Shown here: positions 28,301-53,429 of the stretch, piece after piece
Position numbering within the stretch: position 1 is the first letter of the stretch
Layout: each line of letters starts with the position of its first letter
Assembly: GCA_950097015.1 (NCBI GenBank)
Contig: CATNEN010000008.1
Location: 930,001 to 994,000 of the forward strand
Reading direction: 5' to 3'
DNA length: 64,000 bases
Source of the DNA: Macrostomum hystrix
Taxonomy: Eukaryota; Animalia; Platyhelminthes
Made by a program: the position numbers and the translations under genes
Notes under the pieces: generated by a model
The model's input: only the letters and a program-made list of their open reading frames with translations
Told to the model about the DNA's origin: nothing
Databases searched by the model: none

Positions 28301-29803
28301 TTCAGGCAATTGAGGTGCTGTACTGCAGTGCCTTGGCCACCGACTGTCTGCCTCTCAGAGTTCCAATCCAGGTTGTCGAGGCCCAACAGCCCGTGTGACT
28401 TGTGTGCTGCAGTGACAACCAAGTCGACAGTGCGGAACTTGTCTTTATCATTCCACGTTGCTGTGAACTCGCCCAGGGTCTTGATTATTGATCCATCAAA
28501 TTGCCTCAGGATTCGCTTGGACTTCCTCAGCGCTGGACGCCCGAGCATCTCCCAGTGGCCCCTGGGAATGAGGCTTACGTCGGCGCCTGTGTCCACTTGC
28601 ATCTGCAGCTCTTTGCCGTTGATCTTGACGCGCCGGAAGATGCCTTTTCGCTCCTTGTTCTCCGGTCTGATGACGAAGACGTTGGCGGCATCTGGCTTCG
28701 GGGCGGCATCATCGTCCTCCTCCCAGGTCTCCAAGTGCACAGTGCGGGACCTGCAAACGGCTGCGTAGTGGTTTTTCTTGTTGCAGGTGGTGCACCTTTT
28801 GCCGAAGGCGGGGCATGAGCCCTGCTGGTGCGAACCGCCACAGTATTGGCACTTCGTCCTGGTTGTGTGCCTCGGCGATCTGGTGTCCGGAGGAAGCTGT
28901 GGAGGTGCGGCGCGCCGACCTGCATAGGCGATGCTTGACTCGGTGGTGACGGTGGGCCCGGTGCCGGCGTTGTAGTAGCGAATCTGCTCCAACTGCTCAA
29001 GCTCTTGCAGCACATCGGTCAGCAGCATGTCGATGCCCTGCATCCTCTCCAGCAGTCTGCGCTTGTGGTCCACGGAGGCAAGACCGTCCACGAGCCTCAT
29101 GGTGATGAGTTCGTCCTCACAGGTCTGTTTCGAGCCTAGCTTCTCAAAACTGCACGAGGCAGCAGCTGCTCGGAGCCGGCGGTAGTACGATGCGACGCCT
29201 TCGCTCGGATCCTGCCTGAGGGAGAGGAATTTCACCCTCTCGGCAATGGTGAGGCGCCGCTTGGGCCGAATGGTTGCATCGATGATGTCGCGGATCTGTG
29301 CGAATGTTTTGGTCTCCAGGCTGTCTGGGGCAGCCATGAGGGTCAGGGTTCTCAGTGCCTTGAGGCCTGCCCTCGAGAGGAATAGATCAGTGATCTGGTG
29401 TTCCTCTTCCGAATCCTTCAGTTTCTTGGTCCGTGCAGCGGCCGCGAAACTGAGCAGCCAGGCTTCGGCTGTGTCTGGATCTTCCAGGTTTAGTTCAGAT
29501 GCTTGCGATGCCATTGTCAAGCCGTGCTCAGGAGTATAAGGCAAGACTGCCCGTAGGCTTGGTTTGGGTTAGTAGCGAATTTAGTTTATTAGTCACGATG
29601 TTACACGATACACTTGCATATATATATAAGTAGACGAGTCAACAAGGCTTAAAAGTCAACAGGTGTTGAGTACATCAATAATCAATATTCAGGCTGCGTA
29701 CATTGGGTCAGAGTGCGGTTGGCGCGCAGGCCTGCAGATCTACCACAGTTCACTTGCTTAACACAGTTCACGGTTCATTCACGGCTCAAACCCCGGCACG
29801 TCA
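25377..29803 (-). mobile_element. Full-length Ty3/Gypsy LTR retrotransposon (Mag-like), 4427 bp, 5-bp TSD GGATC
   Basis: Two 289-bp LTRs (25377-25665 and 29515-29803), TG...CA, identical by eye. TSD at 25372-25376 and 29804-29808. PPT GAAGGGGGGAGA (25666-25677, minus strand) abuts the 3' LTR. PBS-like TGGCATCGC starts 1 nt after the 5' LTR. Confidence 0.98.
25663..29514 (-). CDS. Gag-Pol polyprotein (1283 aa): Gag with two Zn knuckles, protease, RT, RNase H, integrase
   Basis: CQYCGGSH...C and CTTCNKKNHYAAVC knuckles, DTGA protease, YQDD RT, TDAS RNase H, HHCC and D-D-E integrase. The order PR-RT-RH-IN is Gypsy-type. Single uninterrupted ORF. Confidence 0.97.
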   Translation of the reverse strand: MASQASELNLEDPDTAEAWLLSFAAAARTKKLKDSEEEHQITDLFLSRAGLKALRTLTLMAAPDSLETKTFAQIRDIIDATIRPKRRLTIAERVKFLSLRQDPSEGVASYYRRLRAAAASCSFEKLGSKQTCEDELITMRLVDGLASVDHKRRLLERMQGIDMLLTDVLQELEQLEQIRYYNAGTGPTVTTESSIAYAGRRAAPPQLPPDTRSPRHTTRTKCQYCGGSHQQGSCPAFGKRCTTCNKKNHYAAVCRSRTVHLETWEEDDDAAPKPDAANVFVIRPENKERKGIFRRVKINGKELQMQVDTGADVSLIPRGHWEMLGRPALRKSKRILRQFDGSIIKTLGEFTATWNDKDKFRTVDLVVTAAHKSHGLLGLDNLDWNSERQTVGGQGTAVQHLNCLKGFQARIKLIEGAKPFYCAARAVPLHLRDRVNQELKRLQAEGIIEPVTEGGSEWASPIVCVLKPNGNIRICADYKAGVNHQVCGDTYPMPTVETIFSDVAGMTDFATLDLSDAYLQIELEEKSREVTTIATPLGLFRYTRLVPGLKSASAIFQKAMETTLEEVNGKVIYQDDILLGGRSSEDLKAKVDEVIKILQAAGMNINLAKSNLGAKSVKFLGYRIGAEGISPDPGLVSKIKEISAPRDRRQLESFLGLCNFFGRFVNNYAHIVEPLNQLRKKGVEFTWTTAQEAAFHQLKKLLSSSPIIQPYDRTKETTLTTDASEKAVAAVLTQEGRPVIYFSRRLTEAETRYSNIEREALAIVWSMERSRQFLLGKRFTLRTDHRPLEFLFGARQQLPKVANARILRWAIRLMGFDFAIEYARGVDIPHADALSRLDFADVPDDPYEAAPQQHLVHWAGESVIGWTELAEETKRDRLLADITRRIAGNRWSGCSPAERQFKAIRHALTLDGSVVCYGDRPVIPASLRSRVLELVHSGAHPGATSTRALVRNSVWWPGYCGDVEGFVRACHTCAKQRQSSHSSVHQWPAESEPWGRVHMDHAHVPKVGLLLILVDAMSAWPEAIRVPDKSAATVRRVLQEVFARNGVPRTLVSDNAAEFHDEGLMSWLHRIGCRAVKTPPYHPQSNGLAERMVQTIKVASAGWDQQEPYDAFLARILLNYRCVPHAGREFSPAQLMGRQLRNPITMKTAIRSEVWYAPTPSATPEKAEFLAQKGSNTALIMRQGDRVTLAHLDQLRRHEAGGNGDVATAAVSHEVAPRPADLPEARHENMPASLTQASAPGETADPPPAASGRVPSPAATPQRPSYNLRANRGVPPERFEGGR

Positions 29804-31571
29804 GGATCCTCAGGTTTGGTCTCTCTATGAAGGATCCTCAGGTTTGGTCTCTATATGATGGATCCTCAGGCTTGGTCTCTATATGATGGATCCTCAGGTT
29901 TGGTCTCTATATGATGGATCCTCAGGTTTGGTTTCTATATGATGGATCCTCAGTTTTGCCTCTATATGATGGATCCTCAGGTTTGGTCTCTATATGATGG
30001 ATCCTCAGGTTTGGTCTCTATATGATGGATCCTCAGGTTTGGTCTCTATATGATGGATCCCTGGTTTGGCCTCTATATGATGGATCCCTGGTTTGGTCTC
30101 TATATGATGGATCCTCAGGTTTGGTCTTAATATGATGGATACTCAGGTTTGGTCTCTATATGATGGATCCTCAGGTTTGGTCTTAATATGATGGATCTTT
30201 GGAAGTTATCAACTTGCTTTGATAATGCTGAATTCGCCAACCTATCAATGACTTCATATAGTAGATATTATTTACAAATCCACAAGCCGTAAGATTGCTA
30301 TATGTCTTAAAAATAAGGAACAGAAGCTAGTTTTTCCGGACCAGTTATTTCTTTCAGATTTTTCTAGAAACGAAGCAGACAATAAAGCTTTTAAACGCAT
30401 TCTGAAATTGAGCGATCGTGAAAGCAGAATTCCTGGCATGTCTTATAGCTTCTGTAAGCGGAGGCCGCATATGCAGTATTTTACTTCGCACACACTTGAA
30501 ATGGTCCAAAACAAGTCTTGGCAGAATAAATCTAATAGGGGCTCGATGCTAACACAGAGTAGCGTATTGCGCCGTGCAAAGTTTATGACCTTGGTATCCT
30601 TCACTCGTGCTAAAGTTTAAGCAGATCTTTGCAATAGAAAGCCTATTGAATAAGCGGCTAAACTAGTTTCATCGTGTTAATAGCTAACTTTAACGGGTAT
30701 CTCTGTTATTGAAGATTTGTATCGCCAAGTTTTAAACACTATTTTTGCTACGAGTTTGTGCTAGCAGTAAAACTACGAATCTCGTAATTACTTCACAATT
30801 ACTTTTTATAGCCCATAGTAGAATGAAAATCTATGGATAGATAAATGTAGCTTTGTAACGCTCAACAGTTTATCATATTTGACTTCAATAAAAATGAAAA
30901 AAAATAATTTTCTCTTGAAATTTTTCATGTCGCTTTCACAGAAGAGAAAATGTGTATTAATATTAAAAGGCGCGCGTGTTTCTTAGAAACGTTCACTCGC
31001 CGCTCCAGGTGCACGAATATCGATTAACTGCACAGGAAGGCGTGGCTATCGCGATCGTAAAAGGCAGGTGGCGCGTCCAACACCTGCTGTTTGTATATCT
31101 GTCCGCTGTCATGTATAGCTCGGGATGACTGATTCACATTGTCGCAAGCACGTGACCATCTATATGATCGGGGTTTTAAGGGCGCATGAAAGCGACGGGG
31201 TGAGACATTTTTGCGCTAGATTTCCGTGGCATAAACATGAGCGCGAAGCAATCACTCATCAGGGGGGGTTGCTCGCACATCTTCGGAGGGTGAACGCCCT
31301 ACAGCATTCGGCTGTGTGCACATTTTCTTATATACACAGCAGTATGGTAAGCCAGTTTGTCTAGCCTAGACTGGGTATAAAACTAAGTGCAGCGAAGCGG
31401 ATTTTACTCACTTCTGCGCCCAGCAACACACTGCCCGCAGCTCTAGCCATTTGCTTCCAGAGGTAAGTCGCCTTCTATGCTGTAAGCCTGTACTATTGAT
31501 TTAAAAATCGTGCGCTAATCTACAGCACAATGATCCCACCCCGAAATCTTAGATTCTAAGAAATTCTTACA

Positions 31572-31832
31572 ATGTCTGACGACAGCGCCAAGGCAGTTTT
31601 GTCCGACATCAGCAGCTTCAACGCCGACCAGCTGAAGAAGGTGGAGGCCCAGGAGAAGGTGGTTCTGCCCAGCGCCGAGCAAGTTGAACAGGAGAAGCGC
31701 GAAGTCAGTCTGAGAGAGGCGATCGAGAAGGGCACCGACCTGAAGCACGTCGAGGTGCAGGAGAAGAGCGTCCTGCCGTCCAAGGAGGAGATTGAAGAAG
31801 AGAAGCGACTGTCACAGGACAAAAGCTCGTGA
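31572..31832 (+). CDS. Two-repeat beta-thymosin/WH2 actin-binding protein, 86 aa
   Basis: Repeats ISSFNADQLKKVEAQEKVVLPSAEQVEQEK and IEKGTDLKHVEVQEKSVLPSKEEIEEEK (LKKx...EK..LPS.E.IE.EK). Likely 5' UTR intron with donor GTAAGT at 31463. AATAAA near 32013 and 32082. Confidence 0.93.
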   Translation: MSDDSAKAVLSDISSFNADQLKKVEAQEKVVLPSAEQVEQEKREVSLREAIEKGTDLKHVEVQEKSVLPSKEEIEEEKRLSQDKSS

Positions 31833-33520: not shown

Positions 33521-33880
33521 AATAATATAAATAATAATAACTGCAGGAGGGCTGCGGGCAATGGCACATCATTTGGTGACAGTAGACACGCAGCCAGCGA
33601 GGAGGCAATTCTGCCCATTTCGCAGACTCCTGAGCACACACGCACACAGATACCGTACGCAGGCACACACTCACACAGAAGTTTTCTCATCGTCAGGCAG
33701 TGTACACTTGGACACTCCATGTGCCTTGGAGGCTGGCCCTCAAGGGCGTAAATTGCCCGACAAGCCCGACAGCCTTTTCACCGCAGCTACGCCCCAAATA
33801 AATGTGGCCTCGCCGCGGAATCGAGCTCAGGGACCTTGGTGCGAGAGGCAAACGCGTTAACCACTCTGCCACCGACCCCC
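33521..33880 (-). mobile_element. tRNA-derived SINE family A, full-length, inverted relative to the 32745 copy
   Basis: The minus strand begins GGGGGTCGGTGGCAGAGTGGTTAACGCGTTTGCCTCTCGCACCAAGGTCCCTGAGCTCGATTCC and ends in an ATT-rich tail. Confidence 0.9.
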
Positions 33881-34412: not shown

Positions 34413-34557
34413 CTAATATATAATATATTATTTATAATTGCAGGAGGGCTGTGGACACTGGCGAGAAGGCAATTCTGCCCTTTCCTTTGTACCGAAAGCA
34501 CCCAAGCTTCCAGGACTCGCCGCGGAATCGAGCTCAGGGACCTTCGTGTTACAAACG
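34413..34557 (-). mobile_element. SINE family A, internally deleted copy
   Basis: Tail plus GCAGGAGGGCTG, GGCAATTCTGCCC and CTCGCCGCGGAATCGAGCTCAGGGACCTT are joined with most of the body missing. Confidence 0.7.
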
Positions 34558-37500: not shown

Positions 37501-38797
37501 AATGGTGTCCTATAGCCGCAATCAATTATCATAGCCAAACTCGGAGGCTGGTCCTTGGGGTTCGGGTGGGCGAGTTTAGGGCAGCGGCGCTCCCCAAATC
37601 GAGTTCTGCACCGGGGAAAGTAGGGAGAAGCAGAGAGATAGCGAGGGCGAGACCGGGGTAATCAGCGGCTTGGCCAACCGGTCGAGACTTGCTGGAAAAT
37701 TCAATTCCCCCCTCCGCTGTCGCTGCTTAAAGTGAAAAAATCAATCATTCAAATCACTGCTTTTCCTTCAATGATTTCCTTTCTTTCGCTTCTCGAGCAG
37801 CCTCTTCAGCTCCGCGCCGCACCTTTTGTGGCGCACCGGCAGTGCCACTTTGAAATTAGACCGAAGTTGCTAACGATGAAGAGCATAATAGTTTTCCAAG
37901 TACTGAAGAAATCGTGAATAAATTTTGTGCAACTAAATTCAATTTTATGGATTTATTTACTGGTTTGAGTTGTAGTATTACGAAGCATACGAAGCATATA
38001 TAAACATAACATTGATGAACAATGCGCATTAGCATAACTGAAGTGGAAATGTTTGAACGATTTCTCGCGGGGAATCTCACGTAACATTCTACAAGATCTG
38101 GTTAAAGTCTAATTGGTTTCTATCCTGACGATACTTAATAAATTTCGAGCGGGCAGGTGAATGACGTTTACACCGACTCCTCGTCGGAATCATACGGCGA
38201 AATGAAGTTAAAAAAGCTGTCATTTGGCTTAAAGACCTCAACGACCTCGGGTTTGCTGAAATTTGAGGGACCGCTGTTGGCGTAGTTCAGGTTCAGCCGC
38301 TCATTTTCAGTGCTTTTTATGCTGCTCTCATCTGCAAATAGTTTGCAATACAGTCTGATTTTGTTTCACGGGCGCTGAGTATACGCAATAATTTCGGTAA
38401 TTTTTTCTGTGAGGCTAACAAATGACTTAAACACCGACACCGTGCTCAACAACTCCTAGGAGTGGATGGCCTTTCTGATCTGTTCAGCGTGTCATTCCAA
38501 GCTGACGAGAGCGTCGAGATCGAGATTCGATGTAAAGAATGACGCAAACTTTTTCCGGGGCACTGTGGCCTACGGAACAATGGCCGACGCTGCGGCCAGA
38601 AATCCTGCATCCCAGCAGCCTCCTTAAGCCGGATCACCACCACTTCGCGAACTTCATTCGCAACCCAATCTCTACGTGTTTAACATATTCTTCGTATGGG
38701 TTTACTTATTATATTTTCGGACACAACTTGTTACTTAAAGTAATCTTTAGAGAATTACAGTCTGTTTTTTATACTGCCTCAGTAGAGAAACAAAAAA

Positions 38798-41700
38798 TCA
38801 AGGATCAAGCTCACCCAGTGGACTGTCGACCATTTTTTTAACTCTCTTAAGGTCTGATTCCGGCTCAGAGCGACCACTTTCGTTGTCAGCTTTGATAGTT
38901 GACTCCGGAACGATGCAAAATACCTTGGTAGTTGGTGAATTTCAAAGTGTAAAATAGCAAACCTTTATTTCAAAGATTGAGAAAAAAAACCCACAAACCT
39001 TGTCGCTGACGTCAACAATAGTCCTGCGCGGAGGAAAAGTGAAGACAAAGCGACCAGTTGGCTTCTTCTTCTTAGCCATTAGGCGACTCTTGTTCCTCAG
39101 CTGGTAGATGCCCAAACAGATGATACCGAACTGCTCCAGTGAGCTGATGTACAGATCCTCCCAGTAGATGGTCTGAGAAGGGTTGGGGTGGCGGAGCTGT
39201 AAGCCAAGGTACCTCAGCTTGTATGCGGGACTTGCCCATTTGGGCTAACCTACCAAAGCACAGCAACAGTTTACACTACCCGACGATGAAATATTCAGTG
39301 CAGGTATACACACCTGTACGTACTCGTACATGTATGGATGTATTTGCCCACTCACAGCCTTTCCGGCTGCGGGTCATGTGAGCATGCAATTGATGTGCTA
39401 ATGCCATTAATAATAATAATAGTATTAATAATGATAATAAGTAAGTAATGATTGCTGGAGGGCTGCGGGCAATGGGACATCATTTGGCGACACTAGACCC
39501 GCAGTCAGCGAGGAGGCAATTCTGCCCATTTCGCTGACTCCTGAGCACACACGAACACAGATACTGTACGCAGGCACACGCTCACAAAGGTGTGTACATC
39601 GGCTCTGACTTTCTCATCATCTCAGGTAGTTTATATTTCAATGTACTTTAGAGGTTGAACCTTAAGGGCGTAACGACAAGCCTTCTCTCTCAAGCCAGCT
39701 GCGCCCCAAATGAATGCGGCCTCGCCGCGGAATCGAGCTCAGGGACCTTTGTGCGAGAGGCAAACGCGTTAGACCACTCTGCCACTCACCCCCATGAGCT
39801 AATGCCCATTAGCCTATTTAATGGTATTGAGTTCATGCACATGGCGCTGTAGATACTCAACAAATGATTCTTGCCATGACAGTTCATCTGGCCAAGCCAC
39901 CTATCATGAGATCAGAGTCTAGATTGCTGAGTCTACACTGATTGCAGAAATGAAGTTCAATTACCTTTGAGTTGAAAGTGTCAAACATTCTGTTCAGCGG
40001 AGCATCCCGTATCGATAGCTGAGAGATCCGAAACGGATAGGAGCGACTGAGCAGGGCAGCGCATTCAACATCGAGCTCAGATGGCATGCCGGCATGCGAG
40101 CCCACAAAATTGTCCACCATCGCCTGGTTGCTGCCCTGAATCAGGGCCTGGAGAAATTGGGCAACCTCGGGACAATGGAATGTGGCGCTCACCAGCGTTG
40201 CAAGCTGCGTGTCGCTGATGACGAGACCCTCAGCGAATGCCTGAGTTCGAATCACATCAGAATCCTGGTAGTCCTGAATGTTTTGGCATCAAGATTGGGT
40301 TAGTACTCTAAATTAGCTTTTATGATTTTCTTCATTTTATTATTATTTAACCATTTACCCTATCGCGCTCTTTCAGATCGCTGAAGAATGACGCAACCTC
40401 CGGGCTGCTAAGGCGCACGGTGAGGTGAAACTTCTCTCGATAGTACCATTCGCCTTGACGACCGATGACCACTGCGCGCACGTTCTCGGCGCACACAATG
40501 GCGTCGGTGTCCACAAGATCGAAGGCTTCCTGGCCTCGCAACTCTGATTGGTGGCCACCGCTGGTACTGTTGTCTCCGCCACCACTCGAACCACCACTAT
40601 TCTTCTCACCGCCTTCGCCAGCTTCGCCGCGAGATTCATTACGTCCGCTGCCACCTCGGCCTTGAGAAGATGTGTCGCTGACTTTGCCGACCTTCAGTAC
40701 GGCGACAGCGCAGGCTGTGTGAACACGACAGCAGACCAGATGGTCGGTAAACATTCCGGATCCGCGGACAAAGTAGACCTTCACATTTAAATGTGTCGTA
40801 AAATTAATGATGGTTTGGGCAATCGTTACTTTCGGTTAATAAATTCACAGGTGAATAAAGATAAAACGATTCCATTAGCCCCTTAGTCACAAAGATTTAC
40901 AAATCCAAATGTTGTCTAGTGTTGCAGATGGTCAGATGGTTGACTTTGAAATTGTTCAGCACTGTTTTAGTACTCATGCTAAATGACAAGCAAATTGAAA
41001 AATCTTGTTTTTTCGACGGTCATTTTCTGCAAAGAGTCATGCACAAGAGAGCAAATTGCAAGTCATTTCGTTGTATACATATTCCCGGCGCTTACCTGTC
41101 GAAAGTTGCGTACATGAGTCCATTCGAACGCAGCCAAGTTGTCGGCGTCGCCTAATACAACGACGTCGCACAACTGGTCCAGCTCAATCAGACGATTGCG
41201 CAGCGGCAGCAGCAGCGGCGCCAGACCAACCGGTGCCGTCACCTCGCCGAGAACGCAGACAACAACGTGATTGCTCCAAGGCACCTCCTTGGCTCCCTCA
41301 ATGTCGAGTAGGCGACAGCGTCTGTCGGGGGCCCAATGCAAAGTTCCGCTGACGTCAGCTAGTTGTGGCCTGCTGCGTTCGTATCGCCAGGTGCTTGCGT
41401 GGCTCAGCGGTCCCTCCATGTTGGCCTGGATGCCAGCTGCGATGTCGCCTTCGCCACCCTCAACTGCGCGCCGAAATTCGGCTTCCTGCTGACGATCGCG
41501 CAGACAGGTGGGCATCAAGGCAATGTCCTCCCAGCTATAGTCTGCGGTAAAAAGATTGTCCGAACAAGCCATTTAAGAAAGGTTACATAGAGAACTACTG
41601 TATAGTATTTTTGGAAGCCTAACTAACAAGCAACAATGAGCAATAGTGTCGTCTGATGCTCACAAATATTCATTTCGCTGTAAGACTGCCGCATACTCAT

Positions 41701-44700
41701 GCAGTCGTTGGCTTCGTTGCCAAGCTTAATCAGGATGTCCATATCCGTGTTGTTCTTGCTGAACAGGGCGTTCTTTCGCATCTGCTTGTCGCGCAGCAAC
41801 TTCTCGGCTACCGACCCTAAAACGATGTAAGACGTACTTTTAAACTGTCAACTCGATGCTAGTGAAATGACCACAATGACCAACCTTTCAGAGACAAGCT
41901 ACACAGAAAAAATCTAGCGCTCTCACTTTGAATTGCCTCAGCTTTGGGCACAACTTCGTTAGCCGCGTCGCCATCGCAGGTGCAAATGCCGTCAGTCTTA
42001 TTTTTGCAGTAGTTGCAGTAGGTTTCCAATCTGCGCAAATCGCTAGCATTCTTACAGATGACGTACGCCTTCATGATGCTGGGATTGATGACGAAATTGG
42101 GATCGCCCGAAGGATTAACAATGTTCGAGCTGTAGTTGCAGCTGGCCTGATCCACTGACACGCCCAGCAGGATGATGCCCCATCTGTCATAGATGATAGC
42201 GCAGGCCGCCTTGAAAGAGAGGCCGCGGAAGGAGCGAGTGAATCGCACGCAATGAAAACTCGACATCAGGCCGAAGTTGTAGAAGGAGCGCCACTTGTAT
42301 TGCTGAAACTGTAATGCACGTTTGAGAACAATAGTTTGAGACAGAACTGAGTACTACGGCTTGAATAGTTATGTGACCGTGTTGGACGAAACAAGAATAA
42401 AAATCATTCTGATCCCGTCATTGCGAAACGAAGTGGATTGACATCATCTCTCATTGTTATTAAGCCTTTGAGGTGTGCAACAGGTACAATTTTCCCTCGG
42501 GGAGGGGACACACGCTGCAATGACCCACGATAAGCTGATGACTAATAACAATAATTTCTCGATTCCTTGAGCGAAAGCTCTTTCCCTCATTAATGAGCAG
42601 CATCATGCTGAACAATGAGAGCTTACGACATCCGTTTTCCTGGCCTCAGTGCTGCAAAGCAGGTTGATAATCAAGGTAGAGAAACCCGGTGCTACACAGT
42701 TGATTCCCATCAGCCCGTTGACAATTTGGTCATTGCAAATCACCGAGTCCAGGTCCCACAGCGAGTTGTAGGCGCTCTTGTTCCGCCAGCCCGTCAAGTA
42801 GTAGTAGGAGAACTGCAATTTATGTGGGCGCAAGGGATTCTTGGATAAGACATGTCAAGATGTCAAGTTCTCCGACCTTGATTCGCACGTCAAGCTTAAT
42901 GGCCTTGCCTTATTGTAGATACTGTGAATCTGTACGATTGTTCTGACATCGGGAAAGTTGAGTTTTACAGTCATAGCCCGCATGTAATTATCGTAGTCAT
43001 CTTCGTCACGGTTGCTTGGCAACAGGCGAGACAATATGATAATGGCGTTCGCAGAGTAGGCTTTCACATCGGTTAGTTGGCGCGGGTTGACGCTGCTGCC
43101 CCGGATGGCTCTGACACGGCCGGTCATGCCATGGAACAGCCACTGGGTCACCGCCGGCAGAGTACCGCTGCGGTGCAAAATAAGTTTTTGTAGTCAAAGA
43201 TGCAAAAACCTATGCGCTATAGTTCTGTTTTCCGGTTCGCTCACCTGTACAGTGCGCAGCACTTTATATGAGCATTCGCACTGCTGTCCCAACGGCCCTT
43301 ATTGTAGAAGTCGTTCAAGAATGCTCTGGTTGTGCTACCCTCGATGGAGCCGGTCAGCACAATGTGTCTGAGCGAGCAGGATAAAGTAGAAATTATACCA
43401 ATTATACTAAAATTTGTCTCACCATTACGAAAACTCGTCACTTTCGACAAACAATTGAACGAACCTCTGTCCAATGCCCGTAGCGAAGGTGGTCTTCTTG
43501 TTCTTCCTATTCTCCACGAACAGCGATAGAAAGGCCGGAACCGAGGTTAGAAAATATGTCTGCAAAAAATGATGACGCACGAAATTTTTGTTGCTCGTTC
43601 ACGGTGGCAAGAGTTTTTACATTGATAACTTACCCCTGCAACCACAATGCATATCATAATTGTCAGCTGTCCCAGCGTAGTTCTGGGATAAATATCCCCG
43701 TAGCCGACAGTGCTAGCAGTGATGATCAGCATGTAGAAGCTGTTGAAGAAGTTCAATGCTTTGCATGGCTCGAATACTCGCGGGCCAAGGAACGGCCAAA
43801 AGTTGTCAAGGTTCTCTACCTGAACGATTATAATAAAATATGAGTACCATTGTTATATATTTTCCGAGTGCCTGTGGACTATGCTAATGACAAGTCGACC
43901 CGTGAACGCCACCCAAGCCTTATGGGGTGACGCTCCACGTGCAGCCGTAAATATTACGCCACGCTTTCAAAGGCTGTGTACAGCAGCTATTCAGTCCCTG
44001 GACTGGAGTGGCCGCTCCATATTTCTACCCCAACTAATGCTGGTACCCATTTTAAAGCTGGGTGAACTGAAGCAATTAATAAGTGTCTTGATAAATGACA
44101 AAATGTGCCTCAATTTTGTGCTGAGGTGCGAACTTCCGACCTCTCATTCAGAAGTCCAACGCTCTAAAGACAAGCTTCCAAGACAAGAGAACGAAGATCC
44201 AGCGAACTCACCAAGTGAACCAAACCAGCGAGGGTCGACCAGAAACAAAACATCCCAATGACCAGCGAAATCAAACTCTTGGAAGTGGCAGCTGAGATTA
44301 TGTTGAAGGAGATCAGTACCTCCTTGATCGCGGCCAGTCGAATGGCACGAAGGAAGTTGAATACTGCAAGTTTCAGATTGGCAGAAGCTCTGATATTTGA
44401 CATGGCCTTGACAGCTGTATGATTGGTGCGATGTTATACCATGGCACTTCTCAAAAATGCGAGTTTTAACTTACACGAGTGTTTGTCTTCGTTGATTATA
44501 GTGCAGATTGAAGGCCCAATAGTACACACTTCCATGAGGCTGTGAGGCGCCACTAGAAATGATGCTTTGTTGGCACTGGCGATGTACTGTAATTCGAGGG
44601 CATCGATACCTGATCCTAATAGTCTATACCTGATACTAAATGGTTGATACCTGATACTAAATGGTTGATACCTGATACTGAATGGTCGATACCTGATACT

Positions 44701-47700
44701 AAATGGTTGATACCTGATACTGAATGGTCGATACCTGATACTAAATGGTTGATACCTGATACTAAATGGTTGATACCTGATACTAAATGGTTGATACCTG
44801 ATACTGAATGGTCGATACCTGGTACTAAATGGTCGATACCTGATACTGAATGGTCGATACCTGATCCTAATAATCTATTCCTGATCCTAATTTCGATAAG
44901 ACATATGGACTGTGCCTAATCCTAATAATAATATTATTACTCACAGGTGACATGATTTTAACCCGCAATTTCTAATTGCGAAAATGCCTGCTAAAAAAGC
45001 AAAGTCTCACCCGAATAAAGAAGTAGACAAGGAAAAAAATGTTGAAACCCAGGTCGATGTAAGCAAACACCCGATCAACTTCATTCTGACAGAATCGCAG
45101 GAATCTGTAGTGACTGAAATCCGATGCAGTCGATTGAAACGGTACTAATTAGAATATTAATTAGTGTTCCAATGCAATAAAGATATATATTATCAATAAG
45201 AAAAAAGCTTTGGGCTTACGTGTGAGTCTGATACAGATAGAAAAAAAACGACACCACAGAGAAAATGCTCCACATGAGGCCCTGTAGAAATGTTAAACGT
45301 GGATTTGGTTCCGGTTAACAATAGAAAGACCATGCGGGTACGCCCGAAAATGTTCATCTATCTGGTGGACTTTCATGAAAATTTAGGAGCTAATCGTGAA
45401 GTAGGCAGTGTGTATTTGACACAGCCCCGTGGCCTATCCACTGTTAACGGAACAGAAAGCAAATAAGTTTTCATCAAACAAACGAGTCTATCATCATTGT
45501 TGGAAAATGTCCTGTACCTTTTTATTTTGCACATTGGGCAGTTAAAATTAATAGTGTAAATTCTGCAATAAAAATAAACGACACGGGAAGGGAGCGAGGG
45601 GAAGAGTGAGTAGTGCTTGGGAAAATGCAGCAACTGGCTTTGGAAAGCTTGGGTCCGTTACTATTGGCAACCATTCTCTTCCAGCATAGGTAGAGAAATT
45701 TCAATCTCAGTCGAAGTCAGAGGTACCCAACCTGTTTGCTTCCTGCATAACCTACAGCATTCTCACCGGAATCTGCCCAATAAGCTGCAGTCTCACCGGA
45801 ATCTGCCCAATAAGCTGCAGTCTCACCGGAATCTGCCCAATAAGCTACAGTCTCACCGGAATCTGCCCAATAAGCTACATTCTCACCGGAATCTGCCCAA
45901 TAAACTACAGTCTCACCCGAATCTGCCCAATAAGCTACAGTCTCACCGGAATCTGCCCAATAAGCTACAGTCTCACCGGAATCTGCCCAATAAGCTACAT
46001 TCTCACCGGAATCTGCCAATAAGCTACAGTCTCACCGGAATCTGCCCAATATGCTACAGTCTCACCGGAATCTGCCCAATAAGCTACAGTCTCACCGGAA
46101 TCTGCCCAATAAGCTACAGTCTCACCGAAATCTGTCCAATAAGCTACAGTCTCACCCGAATCTGCCCAGTAAGCTACAGTCTCACCGACATCTGCCCAAT
46201 AAGCTACAGTCTCACCGGAATCTGCCCAATAAGCTACAGTCTCACCGGAATCCGCCTAAGCAGCGAATTACATCGCCCCAGAATTCGCTCAACAAAGATT
46301 CAATTGTAGATACTCACAAGAATTTTGCCAGGCCAAGACCAGGGCGTTGATAATCTCTCGCAGATCACGCGGAAGCGACCAAAGCATTTCATGAGTTTTT
46401 CCGGCTGCTGCTTCGGGCCGCTAGACCTCACCTTGCAAAATTTGCTCACCAAAAGTTGAATCATCTGGAGTATCAGCAGGAGGCCCCAGAAGCTCACCAT
46501 GCTGATGATCTCGTACGACAGACTGTCGCTCATCTTGCAGCCGCTCAGATTCTCATCACTGAATTTGAATGAGAGTTGTGTTTGAGTGTGGGTGGTGGGT
46601 GTGCTGGAGTGTGGTGTGCTGGAGTGTGGGTGTGCTGGAGTGTGGGTGTGCTGGAGTGTGGTGTGCAAGAGTGCGGGTGTGCTGGAGTGTGGTGTGCAAG
46701 AGTGCGGGTGTGCTGGAGTGCGGGTGTGCTGGAGTGCGGGTGTGCTGGAGTGTGGGTGTGCTGGAGTGTGGTGTGCAAGAGTGCGGGTGTGCTGGAGTGC
46801 GGGTGTGCTGGAGTGTGGTGTGCAAGAGTGCGGGTGTGCTGGAGTGCGGGTGTGCTGGAGTGTGGTGTGCAAGAGTGCGGGTGTGCTGGAGTGCGGGTGT
46901 GCTGGAGTGTGGGTGTGCAAGAGTGTGGGTGTGCAAGATTGTGGCTGTGCAAGAGTGTGGGTGTGCAAGATTGTGGCTGTGCTGGAGTGTGGGTGTGCTG
47001 GAGTGTGGGTGTGCAAGATTGTGGCTGTGCTGGAGTGTGGGTGTGCTGGAGTGTGGGTGTGCAAGATTGTGGCTGTGCTGGAGTGTGGGTGTGCTGGAGT
47101 GTGGGTGTGCAAGAGTGTGGGTGTGCTGGAGTGTGGTGTGCAAGATTGTGGCTGTGCTGGAGTGTGGGTGTGCTGGAGTGTGGTGTGCAAGAACGCGGGT
47201 GTGCAAGAGTGTGGGTGTGCAAGAGTGTGGGTGTGCAAGATTGTGGCTGTGCTGGAGTGTGGGTGTGCTGGAGTGTGGCTGTGCTGGAGTGTGGCTGTGC
47301 TGAGGTGTGGGTGTGCAAGATTGTGGGTGTGCAAGATTGTTGGTGTGCAAGATTGTGGGTGTGCAAGAGTGTGGGTGTGCTGGAGTGTGGGTGCGCTGTA
47401 GTGTGGGTGTACTGGAGTGTGGGTGCGCTGTAGTGTGGGTGTACTGGAGTGTGGGTGTGCCGGAGTGCGGGTGTGCTGGAGTGTGGGTGAGCTGTAGTTT
47501 GGTGTGCAAGAGTGTTGGTGTGCTGAAGTGTGGGCGTGCTGGAGTGTGGGTGAGCTGAAGTGTGGGTGTGCAAGATTGTAGCTGTGCTGGAGTGTGGGTG
47601 TGCTAGATTATGCAGCTAGTCGGTAACTCACTAGGCAATCGTATCGCGAATGAAGCGCATGGCGTCCTGTCTATCCCGGTGCTTATCCGAGCAATTATTC

Positions 47701-47840
47701 TCTAGCGCGCTGCAGATTTGGTCCATGATGTGCTCAACTCCGTGCGAAGCATTCAAACTGCTAGTCCATACCTGAGTTGTTGCATTCAGTTGTTCCAAAG
47801 AATACTCACATGCGAGTTCACTAATAATAGGATCAGACAT
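38798..47840 (-). CDS. slo: Slo-family (BK/Slo1-Slo3-type) voltage-gated K+ channel alpha subunit, divergent paralog, about 1240-1250 aa; 3' end uncertain
   Basis: 18 phase-compatible exons: 47840-47632, 46558-46318, 45281-45220, 45113-45011, 44586-44475, 44363-44212, 43819-43634, 43559-43465, 43367-43245, 43167-42909 (GC donor), 42812-42627, 42308-41927, 41816-41697 (or 41664), 41541-41096, 40778-40359, 40273-39965, 39196-38999, 38923-38798. Contains S0-S6, S4 FLRAIRL, filter STVGYGD, RCK1 HIVLTG and RCK2 HVVVCVLG/TQAFAEG. Intron positions match my recollection of Slo1 genes. Confidence 0.92.
39411..39793 (-). mobile_element. tRNA-derived SINE family A, full-length (Slo intron 16)
   Basis: tRNA-like head ends at 39793; (TAA)n-like tail; imperfect TSD GCTAATGCC(C)ATTA at 39397-39409 and 39798-39811. 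An opposite-strand fragment lies at about 39265-39335, and another fragment at about 51400-51480. Confidence 0.88.
43905..44095 (-). mobile_element. Probable second SINE family (CORE/Nin-like central domain) fragment
   Basis: The minus strand reads CAAGACACTT...AGTTCACCCAGCTTTAAAATGGGTACCAG, typical of conserved SINE central domains. A related plus-strand piece with a B-box-like GCTCGAATCC and GAGCAAGACACTT lies at about 52170-52260. Confidence 0.4.
44606..44890. repeat. 21-bp minisatellite (ATACCTGATACTAAATGGTTG) in Slo intron 4
   Basis: About 13 tandem units. Confidence 0.93.
45761..46258. repeat. 30-bp minisatellite (TCTCACCGGAATCTGCCCAATAAGCTACAG) in Slo intron 2
   Basis: About 16 units, two of them 29 bp. 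Confidence 0.95.
46575..47605. repeat. GT-rich 16-17-bp minisatellite (GTGTGCTGGAGTGTGG / GTGTGCAAGAGTGCGG) filling Slo intron 1
   Basis: About 60 units; occupies nearly all of intron 46559-47631. Confidence 0.95.
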
Positions 47841-48181: not shown

Positions 48182-48503
48182 TGAATCCCAGCCTGACCCA
48201 CAGCCAGACTCCCAGCCTGACCCACAGCGAGAATCCCTACCTGACCCACAGATAGAATCCCAGCCTGACCCACAGCTAGAATCCCAACCTGATCTACAGT
48301 TAGAATCCCAACCTGACTCGCATTTAGAATCCCGACCTGACCCACAGTTAGAATCCCAACTTGACCCACAGTCAGAACCCCAACTTGACCCACAGCAAGA
48401 ATCCCAACCTGACCCGCGGTTAGAACCCAACCTGACCCACAGCCAGAATCCCAACCTGACCCACAGCCAGAATCCCAACCTGACACACTGCCGAAATCCC
48501 ACC
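48182..48503 (+). repeat. About 24-bp minisatellite (AGAATCCCAACCTGACCCACAG..)
   Basis: About 13 degenerate units; related in inverted orientation to the array at 50900-51155. Confidence 0.88.
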
Positions 48504-48899: not shown

Positions 48900-49870
<971 letters not shown>

Positions 49871-50239
49871 CTATTGTCAAAGATTTATTTCCAGGCTTAA
49901 AGTCGGAATCGAAAAAGCGCAAAAAAGTTTTCGGGTTTTCGTTACCTAGATTTTATAGGATTTGATAGACTTTAAGGGACTTAAAAATAAGTATCACAGT
50001 TTTCGCGAGTGCACTTTAGAAGCTTTGCTTCTCGGGTGAAAGGAGCAAGTTGGCGCAGACATTACGAGCTATTCGAGGAACAGACGAGTCGAAGCAGAAA
50101 CATGATTTTTGCAGCAAGCAAAATCTACTCGACTCGGCCGTTAGTTTTGTGCTCATTTGAGAACAGATCATTTTTGGCATTTTTTCGTACAAAATGGGAG
50201 TGATTCGTGCTACGAATCCAGCTTTGGACCCAGCTCATA

Positions 50240-51182: not shown

Positions 51183-53429
51183 CTAAACGTCGGCCCTTAT
51201 GAGAACAAACAGGTCATGCAGGTAGATTCCTTTCTCCGTATAGCTCAGTGTGTTCAGGCCGTCCTTATCCATCCCGGCCTTGACCTTGTGCCAGTAGGGC
51301 CACGGCATCGTGTTGGTGACCACATCGTTGGAATGCTGCAGATTAATGAACCTGGTGAATGTTTTTTCGTTTTTTGGGTGGCACTTTAAATCCTTCTTTC
51401 CACCCGCAAGGAGGAAATTCGCGAGCCTGTTCACAGACACACAAATACGTACTCTGGTACACGCTCACACAGGTGTGTACAATTTTCTATTGTAAAAAAT
51501 GTGGGAACAGGGTTCCATTTAACAAAACCAGCTTTTATAGGAACTATAAAGACCACTCAGCCTTTTCAGTGTGATCAGTCGGCTATCACGTGAAATACGC
51601 TCTGGCCTTCGTGTTCAAGACTTCAAAAGAAATATTTTGATAAGCTATCGTTTATGGTTATAGATTGCGTTGTCTATGGTTCCTAAATCGAACGCTGTTT
51701 TTCTTAAATTCAACCAAGTTTCACCATTTTTACCATAGACAGCCACTGAGTGGCAGCCAGTCTTCTGATTTCCAGTTAACATGAAATCTGATGTGTCTAC
51801 CTGGCGATGTGTCCACCGGGATAGTTGATCCGCATGCCTCGAACTCCCAGCCTGGAGGCCAGCTCGTCATCCTCGCGTCCCCAGCCATAGTACCTGTTGG
51901 AGTTGCCGTTAACACGCTCGAACACGGCCTTGCTGATCGCTGCGGAGCCGCCAAGGAAGTTGTTGTACATCCGACCCCTGTGATACTTCAGGACGTCAGA
52001 CTGCTTGCGCATCTCCGAGATCATCAGCTTCGGCGAGTTGGCGCAGTCGTAGAGGTTGCCGACATTCTCGGGGACTTTGTCAGCGTCCTGTGAGCGACCA
52101 AAAAATGAAAAAGAAGTATGAACAATTGGATCGGCTGTTTGCACAGTGGCATTCGACCATGCACCGGCACATTAACATCTGAACGAGAGGTCGTGAGCTC
52201 GAATCCGAGCCCAAGGGAGACGTTTTGTGTTCTCGAGCAAGACACTTTGTTCCCTACTGTAAATCTGCTGGATACATGTAGCTGTAGCCATTACAAGTCA
52301 ACCCGAATAATCTGATGTTCGCTATCACTGTGCATTGGGGGTTGGCCCAAACGGATTCGAATTGCACTACAAGATCTTCTTTCAGTTTATGCGCCCAAAT
52401 TAATTTGGCATCGATTCAAAGCTCATAAGCTTTCAAGTGACGCGTGACGCAAGTCACTCGACCTCCAAAAATGGAAGAGTACAAACTTTTTCGGTAAATA
52501 TTTTCAAGACGTTTGACACCGAAACACATTTAATTTAGTCGACTTGCCTGCAAAATAAAGCAGTCGAACTTAGCAAACTGCTGCGACACCTGAAAGCCAA
52601 CGTTTAACAGCTTGGCACGGTTAAATAACTTCGTATTTGCCTGCTCAATGACGAAAATGCCGAATGCAATGTTCTGCTGCTGCAGCAGGGCCTGCATGTA
52701 CGGGATGAACAGGTCCAGGTTCTCGCTCCGATTTCGGTACGGCACGAGGATGGCAGTGCGCGACAGCGGCGGCCAACAATGGCTTGGTGCCCAGAAGCCG
52801 CCGCGATGTGCGGGTTTCACAAACGGAAAAGTGGAAGTCGGCTGAGCCAGCAGGTGGGCCAGGTTCTTGTCGCCAGGTCGACGGCACTGCTGCAGATTCT
52901 TTGCCGGCGGAGCTTCGAGGAGTTTTGGAGCGACGTTGCCGGGCGGAGTCGCCAGCTTTGTTAGGGCTCGGTAGAGCTTGGGATAGACAATCCGAAATTC
53001 TGGGACGCTCTTACCGCTGTTGTTAGCCGCCAATTTCTGACTGTGAGGCATCATTGCGGCCAGCTCGTTGAACGGGTCAAACAGTCCGCTAGACTCACTG
53101 GACGGTGTTGTCTTCGCGGAAGAAGGCAGCACTTTATCAAAGTCGCTAGCATCATCCGAGGTGACGTTGAAGCCGCTGGCATCGCCAAACATCATTCGCA
53201 GCGGCAGCCAGGCCAACTGCTGGCTGATGATGCGAACACCGCTGTGTCCTTTCTGGCGGAACGTCAGCAGCACAATGCTAGCCAGGCAGAGAGCGCACAG
53301 GACTAGCGTGACAGTCTGCTTGTTTTGCTGACAAAACAGAGCTCGCATCTCCCACTGCTGCCCCTGTCTCTCTGGCTCTCGCTGGCTTGTTTCAGTTAGA
53401 GTGACATTTCGTGTAGCACCTCCTGACAC
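51183..53429 (-). CDS. GT7-family beta-1,4-galactosyl/N-acetylgalactosaminyl-transferase, type II membrane protein, 445 aa
   Basis: Exons 53429-52548 (GC donor CAG|GCAAGT), 52087-51801, 51351-51183. N-terminal TM segment; motifs AILVPYRNR, FNRAKLLNVGF, DCFILQ|DAD (DxD), GWGREDDE, DGLNTLSY. Confidence 0.92.

What the first reader, a model, noticed from the sequence alone, without database searches (positions are those of the whole stretch)
39965..43367. Slo1-type channel with all known Ca2+-sensing sites degenerate: candidate Ca2+-independent BK paralog
Seen: the Ca-bowl position reads SFFSDLKERDR|DYQDSDVIRTQAFAEG instead of [24 protein letters not shown]. The RCK1 site reads NDFYNKGR instead of KDFLHKDR (D367 to G; the H365 proton sensor to N), and the E535 position reads S (FGLMSSFH vs EGVSNEMY). 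The pore (STVGYGD) and S0-S6 are intact and all 18 exons splice in frame, so it does not look like a pseudogene. Established: these residues mediate Ca2+ and H+ activation of Slo1 (mouse numbering from memory), and vertebrate Slo3 lost the Ca bowl. Inference: this is an invertebrate Slo paralog gated by something other than Ca2+, possibly convergent with sperm Slo3.
Basis: partly seen in the sequence, partly recalled or inferred. Interest (0 to 1): 0.72.

Follow-up and report, generated by a model that had tools for sequence, protein, structure and literature searches.

The report
Divergent flatworm BK-type potassium channel
This is an intact, conserved flatworm gene for a very divergent BK-type potassium channel that has lost one calcium sensor and the magnesium sensor but keeps the two key aspartates of the second calcium sensor, so it is an interesting natural variant and not shown to be calcium-blind.

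Summary
The quoted sequences are real. They lie in a 19-exon, 1294-residue minus-strand gene (47840 to 38168).

The gene is a Slo1-type (BK-like) channel of a Macrostomum flatworm:
- It has S0-S6, a TVGYGD filter, two RCK domains and a Slowpoke_C tail.
- It has a syntenic ortholog in M. lignano (72% identity, dN/dS about 0.1), so it is functional and not a pseudogene.

Lost sites, in both species:
- RCK1 Ca2+ site: D367 to G/T, E535 to S/T.
- Mg2+ site: E374, E399 and N172.

Three independent aligners place Asp on both essential ligands (mouse D898/D900, human D895/D897). The local sequence is E-R-D-R-D-Y-Q, identical in both species. The loop is remodelled by a 3-residue insertion, and N449 is L.

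"All Ca2+ sites degenerate" is therefore only partly right, and Ca2+ independence is unproven.

In trees the gene sits on a very long branch inside animal Slo1-type channels. It is not with vertebrate Slo3, so any likeness to Slo3 is convergent. Its nearest non-Macrostomum relative is a trematode fragment, which hints at an old flatworm paralog.

This scan's first readers have noted other odd Slo genes in this genome; those notes are unchecked.

The parts
38168..47840 (-). Whole coding span of the Slo1-type channel gene: 19 exons, 3885 nt CDS, 1294 aa
   Evidence: Spliced model guided by the M. lignano ortholog. All junctions are GT-AG except one GC-AG, all are in frame, and the only stop is the terminal one.
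47632..47840 (-). Exon 1: start codon and extracellular N-terminal domain (4 Cys, 4 N-x-S/T sequons)
   Evidence: 40% identical to the N-terminus of P0001. First ATG of the open frame. Sequons counted.
46318..46558 (-). Exon 2: S0 helix (aa 87-105) and S0-S1 linker
   Evidence: Hydropathy peak 1.99. BLAST to Slo1 proteins starts at aa 89.
45220..45281 (-). Exon 3: S1
45011..45113 (-). Exon 4: S2 (D153 and R167 equivalents kept)
44475..44586 (-). Exon 5: S2-S3 linker and S3 (N172 to A; D186 to E)
44212..44363 (-). Exon 6: S4 and S5 (R207 to N; R210, R213 and E219 kept)
43634..43819 (-). Exon 7: pore helix, TVGYGD selectivity filter and start of S6
   Evidence: Pfam Ion_trans_2, E 3.5e-12..
43465..43559 (-). 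Exon 8: end of S6 and C-linker (E321 to A, E324 to S)
43245..43367 (-). Exon 9: start of RCK1. D362 kept, H365 to N (43301-43303), D367 to G (43295-43297), E374 to H or K
42909..43167 (-). Exon 10: RCK1 N-lobe. E399 to R (43110-43112), N449 to L (42960-42962). GC-AG donor
   Evidence: Pfam Slo-like_RCK..
42627..42812 (-). Exon 11: RCK1, first half of BK_channel_a
   Evidence: Pfam PF03493, E 7.5e-9..
41927..42308 (-). Exon 12: RCK1 C-lobe. E535 to S (42258-42260)
   Evidence: Alignment to 6v22 numbering..
41664..41816 (-). Exon 13: RCK1-RCK2 linker
41096..41541 (-). Exon 14: linker and start of RCK2
   Evidence: PDB Slo1 hits, E 2e-8. Query of the exhaustive search.
40359..40778 (-). Exon 15: RCK2 with a Gly/Ser-rich loop. 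It ends in the first half of the Ca bowl, including D1042 (40362-40364), the mouse D898 equivalent
39965..40273 (-). Exon 16: begins with D1042's partner D1044 (40271-40273), the mouse D900 equivalent. Rest of the bowl and the TQxFAxG motif
   Evidence: Ungapped phmmer alignment to Aplysia Slo1 905-999..
38999..39172 (-). Exon 17: Slowpoke_C domain
   Evidence: Pfam PF21014, E 8e-11..
38815..38923 (-). Exon 18: C-terminal tail
38168..38331 (-). Exon 19: C-terminal tail and stop codon

Best explanation
The locus is an intact, expressed-looking gene for the pore-forming subunit of a very divergent Slo1-type (BK-like) K+ channel of a Macrostomum flatworm.

Shown:
- It has the full Slo1 layout: an extracellular N-terminus, S0-S6, a TVGYGD filter, tandem RCK1 and RCK2, and a Slowpoke_C tail.
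- It has a syntenic ortholog in M. lignano and has evolved under strong purifying selection.
- Most voltage-sensor charges are kept (D153, R167, R210, R213, E219).
- Both side-chain ligands of the RCK1 Ca2+ site are replaced, as are three Mg2+ ligands (N172, E374, E399).
- Both essential Ca-bowl aspartates are kept, in a loop remodelled to alternate Arg and Asp (R-D-R-D). That loop is identical in the two species.

Inferred:
- The channel is mainly voltage-gated.
- It has lost Mg2+ activation and RCK1-mediated Ca2+ activation.
- Any remaining Ca2+ or divalent sensitivity runs through the modified bowl alone, like a natural D367A/E535A/E399 mutant.
- It probably conducts less than BK, because the E321/E324 charge ring is A/S. 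The role of that ring is from my memory.

It most likely belongs to an old flatworm-specific Slo paralog line that trematodes also carry. It is separate from the flatworm BK gene and unrelated by descent to vertebrate Slo3.
For: Gene model and family:
- Complete in-frame 19-exon model.
- Pfam Ion_trans_2, Slo-like_RCK twice, BK_channel_a and Slowpoke_C on single exons.
- The ortholog P0001 scores 289 bits (E 4e-85) to Drosophila, Aplysia and human Slo1. It scores 72 bits to Slo2.

Orthology and constraint:
- 72% identity to the M. lignano protein; dN 0.21, dS saturated near 2, ratio about 0.10.
- Both flanks are syntenic.

Site map:
- E535 to S.
- D367 to T or G, H365 to N, E374 and E399 non-acidic, N449 to L.
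- Bowl D/D kept under three aligners. Ligand roles are from PMC5677106.
- The kept aspartates are at i and i+2, while the residues between and beside them changed to R, R and Y.
- The bowl loop is 88-93% conserved. The former RCK1 site loop is 64-65% conserved and carries an indel.

Trees and relatives:
- The gene falls inside the animal Slo1-type clade and not with Slo3.
- The best non-Macrostomum hit among 1.84 billion representatives is an Echinostoma caproni fragment. The RCK2 tree pairs the two (SH-aLRT 93; 93/58).
- An upstream exon on that trematode contig is matched only by the Macrostomum proteins, not by canonical or neodermatan BK.
Against: - No transcript evidence could be obtained.
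- Keeping two aspartates does not prove Ca2+ binding. The loop has a 3-residue insertion, three added basic residues and far less negative charge. The fifth ligand N449 is Leu.
- In my alignment whale Slo3 also has E/D at these two positions.
- The Echinostoma relative has H/N there in an ungapped reading, so the pair is not conserved across the putative paralog clade.
- The link to the trematode fragment joins long branches and is only moderately supported.
- I could not show that Macrostomum also has a canonical Slo1.
Confidence: 0.6

Rival explanations
1. One reading: a fully Ca2+-independent Slo channel. It would be gated by voltage alone or with another ligand (pH, Na+, a lipid or nucleotide), functionally convergent with Slo3.
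For: - The RCK1 site and Mg2+ site ligands are all replaced in two species.
- The bowl has lost most of its acidic run, gained K, R and R, carries a 3-residue insertion, and N449 is Leu.
- The Echinostoma relative lacks the Asp pair.
Against: - Both essential bowl aspartates are kept, in a loop that is identical in two species whose synonymous sites are saturated.
- The pattern of changes spares exactly the i and i+2 ligand positions.
- No candidate site for another ligand was found.
Confidence: 0.3
2. It is not a paralog. It would be the Macrostomum ortholog of Slo1/BK that simply evolved very fast.
For: - No canonical Macrostomum Slo1 turned up in the word-limited searches.
- The full-length tree leaves its position inside the animal Slo1-type clade unresolved.
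Against: - It does not group with the neodermatan flatworm BK clade in the full-length tree or the two RCK2 trees.
- It groups, moderately, with a second trematode Slo gene.
- Other Slo loci are noted in this same genome by first readers (unchecked).
- The searches could not have ranked a Macrostomum Slo1 high enough to be listed, so its absence from the lists means little.
Confidence: 0.12
3. A decaying or non-functional gene copy.
For: The branch is extremely long (stem 5.4 changes per site) and several canonical functional residues are lost.
Against: - 3885 nt of open frame over 19 exons with good splice sites.
- dN/dS about 0.1 against a syntenic ortholog.
- Filter, S4 and gating-ring cores are 90-100% conserved between the species.
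Confidence: 0.03

Closest known systems
Slo1 / BK channel alpha subunit (KCNMA1, Drosophila slowpoke, Aplysia Slo1; PDB 6v22, 7pxe, 5tj6)
   Same: - Same S0-S6 plus tandem RCK architecture and GYGD filter.
- S4 R210 and R213 are kept, as are the Slowpoke_C tail and the bowl aspartates mouse D898/D900.
- Best PDB matches, E about 1e-85.
   Different: - Only about 27-30% identity.
- D367 and E535 are lost.
- Mg2+ ligands N172, E374 and E399 are lost, and N449 is Leu.
- The bowl's acidic run is replaced by an R-D-R-D-Y-Q pattern with a 3-residue insertion.
- E321/E324 are A/S and R207 is N.
Slo3 (KCNU1), the vertebrate sperm pH- and voltage-gated channel (PDB 4hpf)
   Same: A Slo1-derived channel whose canonical divalent sites are largely replaced while the overall fold is kept.
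   Different: - Independent origin. Slo3 groups with chordate Slo1 and a shark gene, and the Macrostomum gene does not.
- The Slo3 C-terminal domain scores lower than Slo1 C-terminal domains (144 against 160-166 bits).
- No evidence on pH gating or on expression in sperm.
Macrostomum lignano hypothetical protein BOX15_Mlig020928g1 (P0001)
   Same: Syntenic ortholog with 72% identity. It has the same lost sites and the same E-R-D-R-D-Y-Q bowl.
   Different: - D367 equivalent is T instead of G; E535 equivalent is T instead of S.
- The RCK1 loop is 2 residues longer.
- It is unnamed and unstudied in the record.
Echinostoma caproni fragment VDP79684.1 (P0003) on contig UZAN01043961.1
   Same: - Best non-Macrostomum hit in the exhaustive search.
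- Shares HWAPD and the VCV-G motif.
- Pairs with the gene in RCK2 trees.
- An upstream exon on its contig is matched only by the Macrostomum proteins.
   Different: - Only the RCK2 part is annotated.
- About 31% identity.
- Its bowl lacks the Asp pair in an ungapped reading.
- Orthology is suggestive and not established.
Neodermatan flatworm BK channels (for example Schistosoma mansoni P0157, Clonorchis P0117)
   Same: Flatworm Slo1-type channels with one canonical divalent sensor altered.
   Different: The pattern is the opposite. They keep D367 and E535 but have a degenerate bowl; S. mansoni reads H and G at the two Asp positions. They form a separate clade.

Membership tests
Slo1-type (BK) channel | Extra S0 helix before S1-S6, giving an extracellular N-terminus | tested here: met
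   Hydropathy peak at aa 87-105 ahead of S1. BLAST to Slo1 proteins starts at aa 89.
Slo1-type (BK) channel | K+ selectivity filter T-V-G-Y-G-D | tested here: met
   TVGYGD at aa 330-335, window 43694-43711.
Slo1-type (BK) channel | Tandem RCK1 and RCK2 gating ring with BK_channel_a and Slowpoke_C | tested here: met
   Pfam hits on single exons. PDB Slo1 gating-ring matches.
Slo1-type (BK) channel | Charged S4 and partner charges (D153, R167, D186, R207, R210, R213, E219) | tested here: inconclusive
   D153, R167, R210, R213 and E219 are kept. D186 is E and R207 is N. The voltage dependence itself was not measured.
Slo1-type (BK) channel | RCK1 high-affinity Ca2+ site (D367 and E535 side chains) | tested here: not met
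   D367 is G (T in M. lignano) and E535 is S (T in M. lignano).
Slo1-type (BK) channel | Ca bowl: side chains of mouse D898 and D900, plus N449 from the neighbouring subunit | tested here: inconclusive
   Both aspartates are present as D1042 and D1044 in both species. But N449 is L, there is a 3-residue insertion, and the acidic run is replaced. Binding cannot be tested with these tools.
Slo1-type (BK) channel | Mg2+ site (N172, E374, E399; D99 nearby) | tested here: not met
   N172 is A, E374 is H or K, and E399 is R. The D99 region cannot be aligned.
Slo1-type (BK) channel | Inner-mouth charge ring E321/E324 linked to large conductance (role recalled from memory) | tested here: not met
   A364 and S367 at these positions.
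Slo3 (KCNU1) | Membership of the vertebrate Slo3 clade | tested here: not met
   Slo3 sequences group with chordate Slo1 and a shark gene with full support. The window gene lies elsewhere.
Slo3 (KCNU1) | pH-dependent gating and sperm-specific expression | not testable with these tools
No expression table held the M. lignano gene id.
Slo2 (KCNT, Na+-activated) | Closest sequence kinship to Slo2, with no S0 and an uncharged S4 | tested here: not met
   Slo2 chains score 70-72 bits against 289 for Slo1. S0 and S4 arginines are present.

The most novel reading that the evidence does not exclude
Flatworms may carry two old Slo1-type paralogs that divided the two Ca2+ sensors between them. The BK-type gene keeps the RCK1 site (D367/E535) but has a degenerate bowl. 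This gene lost the RCK1 and Mg2+ sites but, in Macrostomum, keeps the bowl's Asp pair. It would then be a natural single-sensor, bowl-only Slo channel, or one whose frozen R-D-R-D loop now binds something other than Ca2+.
Probability: 0.2. Interest if true: 0.6.

Novelty: new variant of a known kind. Interest (0 to 1): 0.4.

Why it matters
BK channels combine voltage, two Ca2+ sites and a Mg2+ site. The contribution of each has been dissected mainly with laboratory mutants.

A conserved natural channel that has dropped the RCK1 and Mg2+ sites would be a ready-made test. It keeps the two essential bowl carboxylates in an otherwise recharged loop, so it would show what the bowl alone can do and how much of the acidic run is dispensable.

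With the opposite pattern in parasitic-flatworm BK channels, it also suggests that flatworm Slo channels differ in their sensors from the nematode and insect SLO-1 channels studied as anthelmintic targets. The finding is a divergent family member and not a new kind of channel, and its function is untested.

Tried and rejected
Neither exon use nor tissue expression was checked.
- Expression tables: the M. lignano gene id occurs in no held paper and in no supplement of PMC5816591.
- Canonical Macrostomum Slo1: three word-indexed searches did not list one. The first was swamped by the Gly/Ser-rich loop. The third returned 7888 hits and showed only the best 120, so this blank says nothing about absence.
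- Exon 9 and exon 15 alone against the PDB gave only chance or low-complexity hits. These sites were mapped through the ortholog and through profile alignment instead.
- Pseudogene reading: rejected on the open frame and dN/dS.
- Slo2 and Slo3 membership: rejected on scores and trees.
- tRNA or Rfam identity for the repeat in intron 16: none found.
- Structure prediction was not run. The fold tools return no residue-level superposition or side-chain geometry, so they could not decide the bowl question.
- The joined 1294-residue model has no reference. It was used only inside local scripts and was never sent to a database, fold or family search. Those searches used single exons by reference or the M. 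lignano protein id.
- Papers: no study of flatworm Slo paralogs was found.


Full report
**What is there**

The finding lies on the minus strand. Pfam scans of single exons gave Ion_trans_2, Slo-like_RCK twice, BK_channel_a in two halves, and Slowpoke_C.

An exhaustive HMMER search with exon 14 against 1.84 billion representatives found one close relative, P0001 (E 4e-59). All other hits had E of 4e-11 or weaker. P0001 is the Macrostomum lignano hypothetical protein BOX15_Mlig020928g1. Earlier notes of this scan also call this genome a Macrostomum flatworm.

With P0001 as guide I placed every junction in a local script:
- There are 19 coding exons from 47840 to 38168, giving 3885 nt and 1294 residues.
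- All introns are GT-AG except one GC-AG after exon 10. There is no internal stop.

The joined model has no reference. I used it only inside scripts. Every database, family and structure-bank search used single exons by reference or the id P0001.

**Is it a working gene?**

- Against the M. lignano locus L001, 1240 codons align at 72% amino-acid identity. dN is 0.21, synonymous sites are saturated (dS about 2), and the ratio is about 0.10. The ratios that could be computed are 0.08-0.09 for S0-S6, RCK1 and RCK2 and 0.24 for the C-terminal tail; dS was too saturated to give one for the N-terminal domain and the linker. Some aligned pieces ran a little into introns, which can only raise dN.
- ORFs from both flanks of L001 match the window on the expected sides and strand: 51.2-53.4 kb upstream and 31.6-31.8 kb downstream. 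The two genes are therefore syntenic orthologs.
- A pseudogene is very unlikely.

**Family**

- P0001 scores 289 bits (E about 1e-85) to Drosophila, Aplysia and human Slo1 chains.
- It scores 144 bits to the Slo3 gating ring, against 157-166 for Slo1 gating rings, and only 70-72 bits to Slo2.
- Identity to any Slo1 is 27-30%.
- A hydropathy peak at residues 87-105 precedes S1, so S0 is present.

**Site map**

Ligand roles come from Zhou, Yang and Lingle 2017 (PMC5677106):
- RCK1 site: side chains of D367 and E535, plus backbone carbonyls.
- Ca bowl: side chains of mouse D898 and D900 (Aplysia D905/D907, human D895/D897), backbone of Q892 and D895, and N449 from the neighbouring subunit.
- Mg2+ site: N172, E374 and E399, with D99 nearby.

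| Slo1 position | Window | M. lignano |
|---|---|---|
| D362 | D | D |
| H365 | N | N |
| D367 | G411 | T |
| E535 | S593 | T |
| E374 | H or K, depending on the aligner | H or K |
| E399 | R | R |
| N172 | A | A |
| N449 | L | L |

**The Ca bowl**

- phmmer aligns exon 16 without gaps to Aplysia 905-999. This puts the first residue of the exon, D1044, on Aplysia D907.
- With the spliced junction K-E-R-D-R | D-Y-Q, D1042 falls on Aplysia D905.
- MAFFT on 30 Slo proteins and a profile HMM built from 22 canonical Slo1 proteins give the same pairing: R-D-R-D-Y-Q-D-S-D on D-D-D-D-D-P-D-T-E.
- The extra three residues lie upstream of the ligand pair.
- M. lignano has the identical E-R-D-R-D-Y-Q.

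The changes spare exactly the i and i+2 carboxylates and replace their neighbours with R, R and Y.

Conservation between the two species:
- Bowl loop: 88% identical, and 93% over the 72 residues around it.
- Whole protein: 72%.
- Former RCK1 site loop: 64-65%, with an indel.

This fits continued constraint on the bowl loop and relaxed constraint on the old RCK1 site. It does not prove Ca2+ binding, for four reasons:
- The loop is far less acidic.
- N449 is Leu.
- In my alignment whale Slo3 also has E and D at the two positions.
- Human Slo3 is reported as Ca2+-activated (abstract of PMC3966514), and from general knowledge it lacks a canonical bowl. Residue patterns therefore predict function poorly in this family.

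**Other features**

- D153, R167, R210, R213 and E219 are kept. R207 is N and D186 is E.
- The filter is TVGYGD.
- The E321/E324 positions are A and S. From memory, that ring raises BK conductance.

**Phylogeny**

- In a 40-protein tree the window gene and P0001 form a pair on a stem of 5.4 changes per site. The pair sits inside the animal Slo1-type clade (SH-aLRT 99 against protist outgroups), and its position there is unresolved.
- Bird and mammal Slo3 group with a shark gene and chordate Slo1, far from the pair.
- The best non-Macrostomum hit of the exhaustive search is a 428-residue RCK2 fragment of the trematode Echinostoma caproni.
- RCK2-only trees pair that fragment with the Macrostomum genes: SH-aLRT 93 in the quick tree and bootstrap 93 / SH-aLRT 58 in the careful tree. 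Both trees carry long-branch warnings.
- Independently, an exon 10 kb upstream on the same trematode contig matches Macrostomum residues 615-666 (E 1e-4). Canonical and neodermatan BK queries do not find it.
- Trematodes and cestodes also have a separate BK clade that keeps D367 and E535 but has a degenerate bowl.

This suggests, without proving, an old flatworm paralog distinct from flatworm BK.

First readers of this scan noted further unusual Slo genes elsewhere in this genome (s1-286180, s1-346786, s1-346804). I could not read those loci, so they are leads only.

**Verdict**

The gene is real, intact and conserved. It is a strongly divergent Slo1-type channel with the RCK1 Ca2+ and Mg2+ sites lost and a remodelled bowl that keeps both essential aspartates.

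Ca2+ independence, another ligand and a sperm role all remain untested.

I rate it a new variant of a known kind, of moderate interest.

Noticed in passing
window 46595-47604, 45761-46256, 44603-44870: Three introns of the channel gene hold long minisatellites. Intron 1 has 64 copies of a 16-mer, intron 2 has 17 copies of a 30-mer, and intron 4 has 13 copies of a 21-mer. All give long spurious ORFs in several frames.
   Followed up: partly
window 48183-48488 and 48903-49877: Two more tandem arrays lie just upstream of the gene: a 24-mer in 13 copies and CTGT-rich 12/16/28-mers over about 1 kb.
   Followed up: no
window 33817-33841, 34524-34548, 39729-39753: A short interspersed repeat occurs three times on the plus strand (0-1 mismatch over 25 nt, none expected by chance). 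One copy is inside intron 16. ARAGORN and Rfam do not recognise it.
   Followed up: partly
window 42908-42909 (donor of exon 10): A GC-AG intron. The donor reads AAG|GCAAGG, and the join is confirmed by the M. lignano protein.
   Followed up: yes
window 51186-53381 (minus) and 31566-31829: Neighbouring coding regions are conserved in order and strand with the M. lignano contig NIVC01001255.1 (up to 56-83% identity). This shows local synteny. I did not identify the genes.
   Followed up: partly
window 26242-28380 (minus): A long ORF upstream of the M. lignano gene matches here at 29-33% identity over more than 500 residues. It is out of syntenic order and may be a repeated or mobile element.
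   Followed up: no
proteins P0117, P0148, P0157, P0160-P0164 (neodermatan BK channels): Parasitic-flatworm BK channels keep D367 and E535, but their Ca bowl is degenerate. Schistosoma mansoni reads H and G at the two essential Asp positions in an ungapped alignment. E399 is K.
   Followed up: partly
L002 267-413 (Echinostoma caproni UZAN01043961.1): A 52-residue "gene" annotated on its own is really an RCK1 C-lobe exon of the Slo-like gene. The rest of that gene is annotated 10 kb downstream as VDP79684.1.
   Followed up: partly
protein P0046 (Hemiscyllium ocellatum): A shark Slo gene that is sister to bird and mammal Slo3 has an E-D-R-D-D-P bowl. A D-R-D core therefore also occurs in the vertebrate Slo3 stem lineage.
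   Followed up: no
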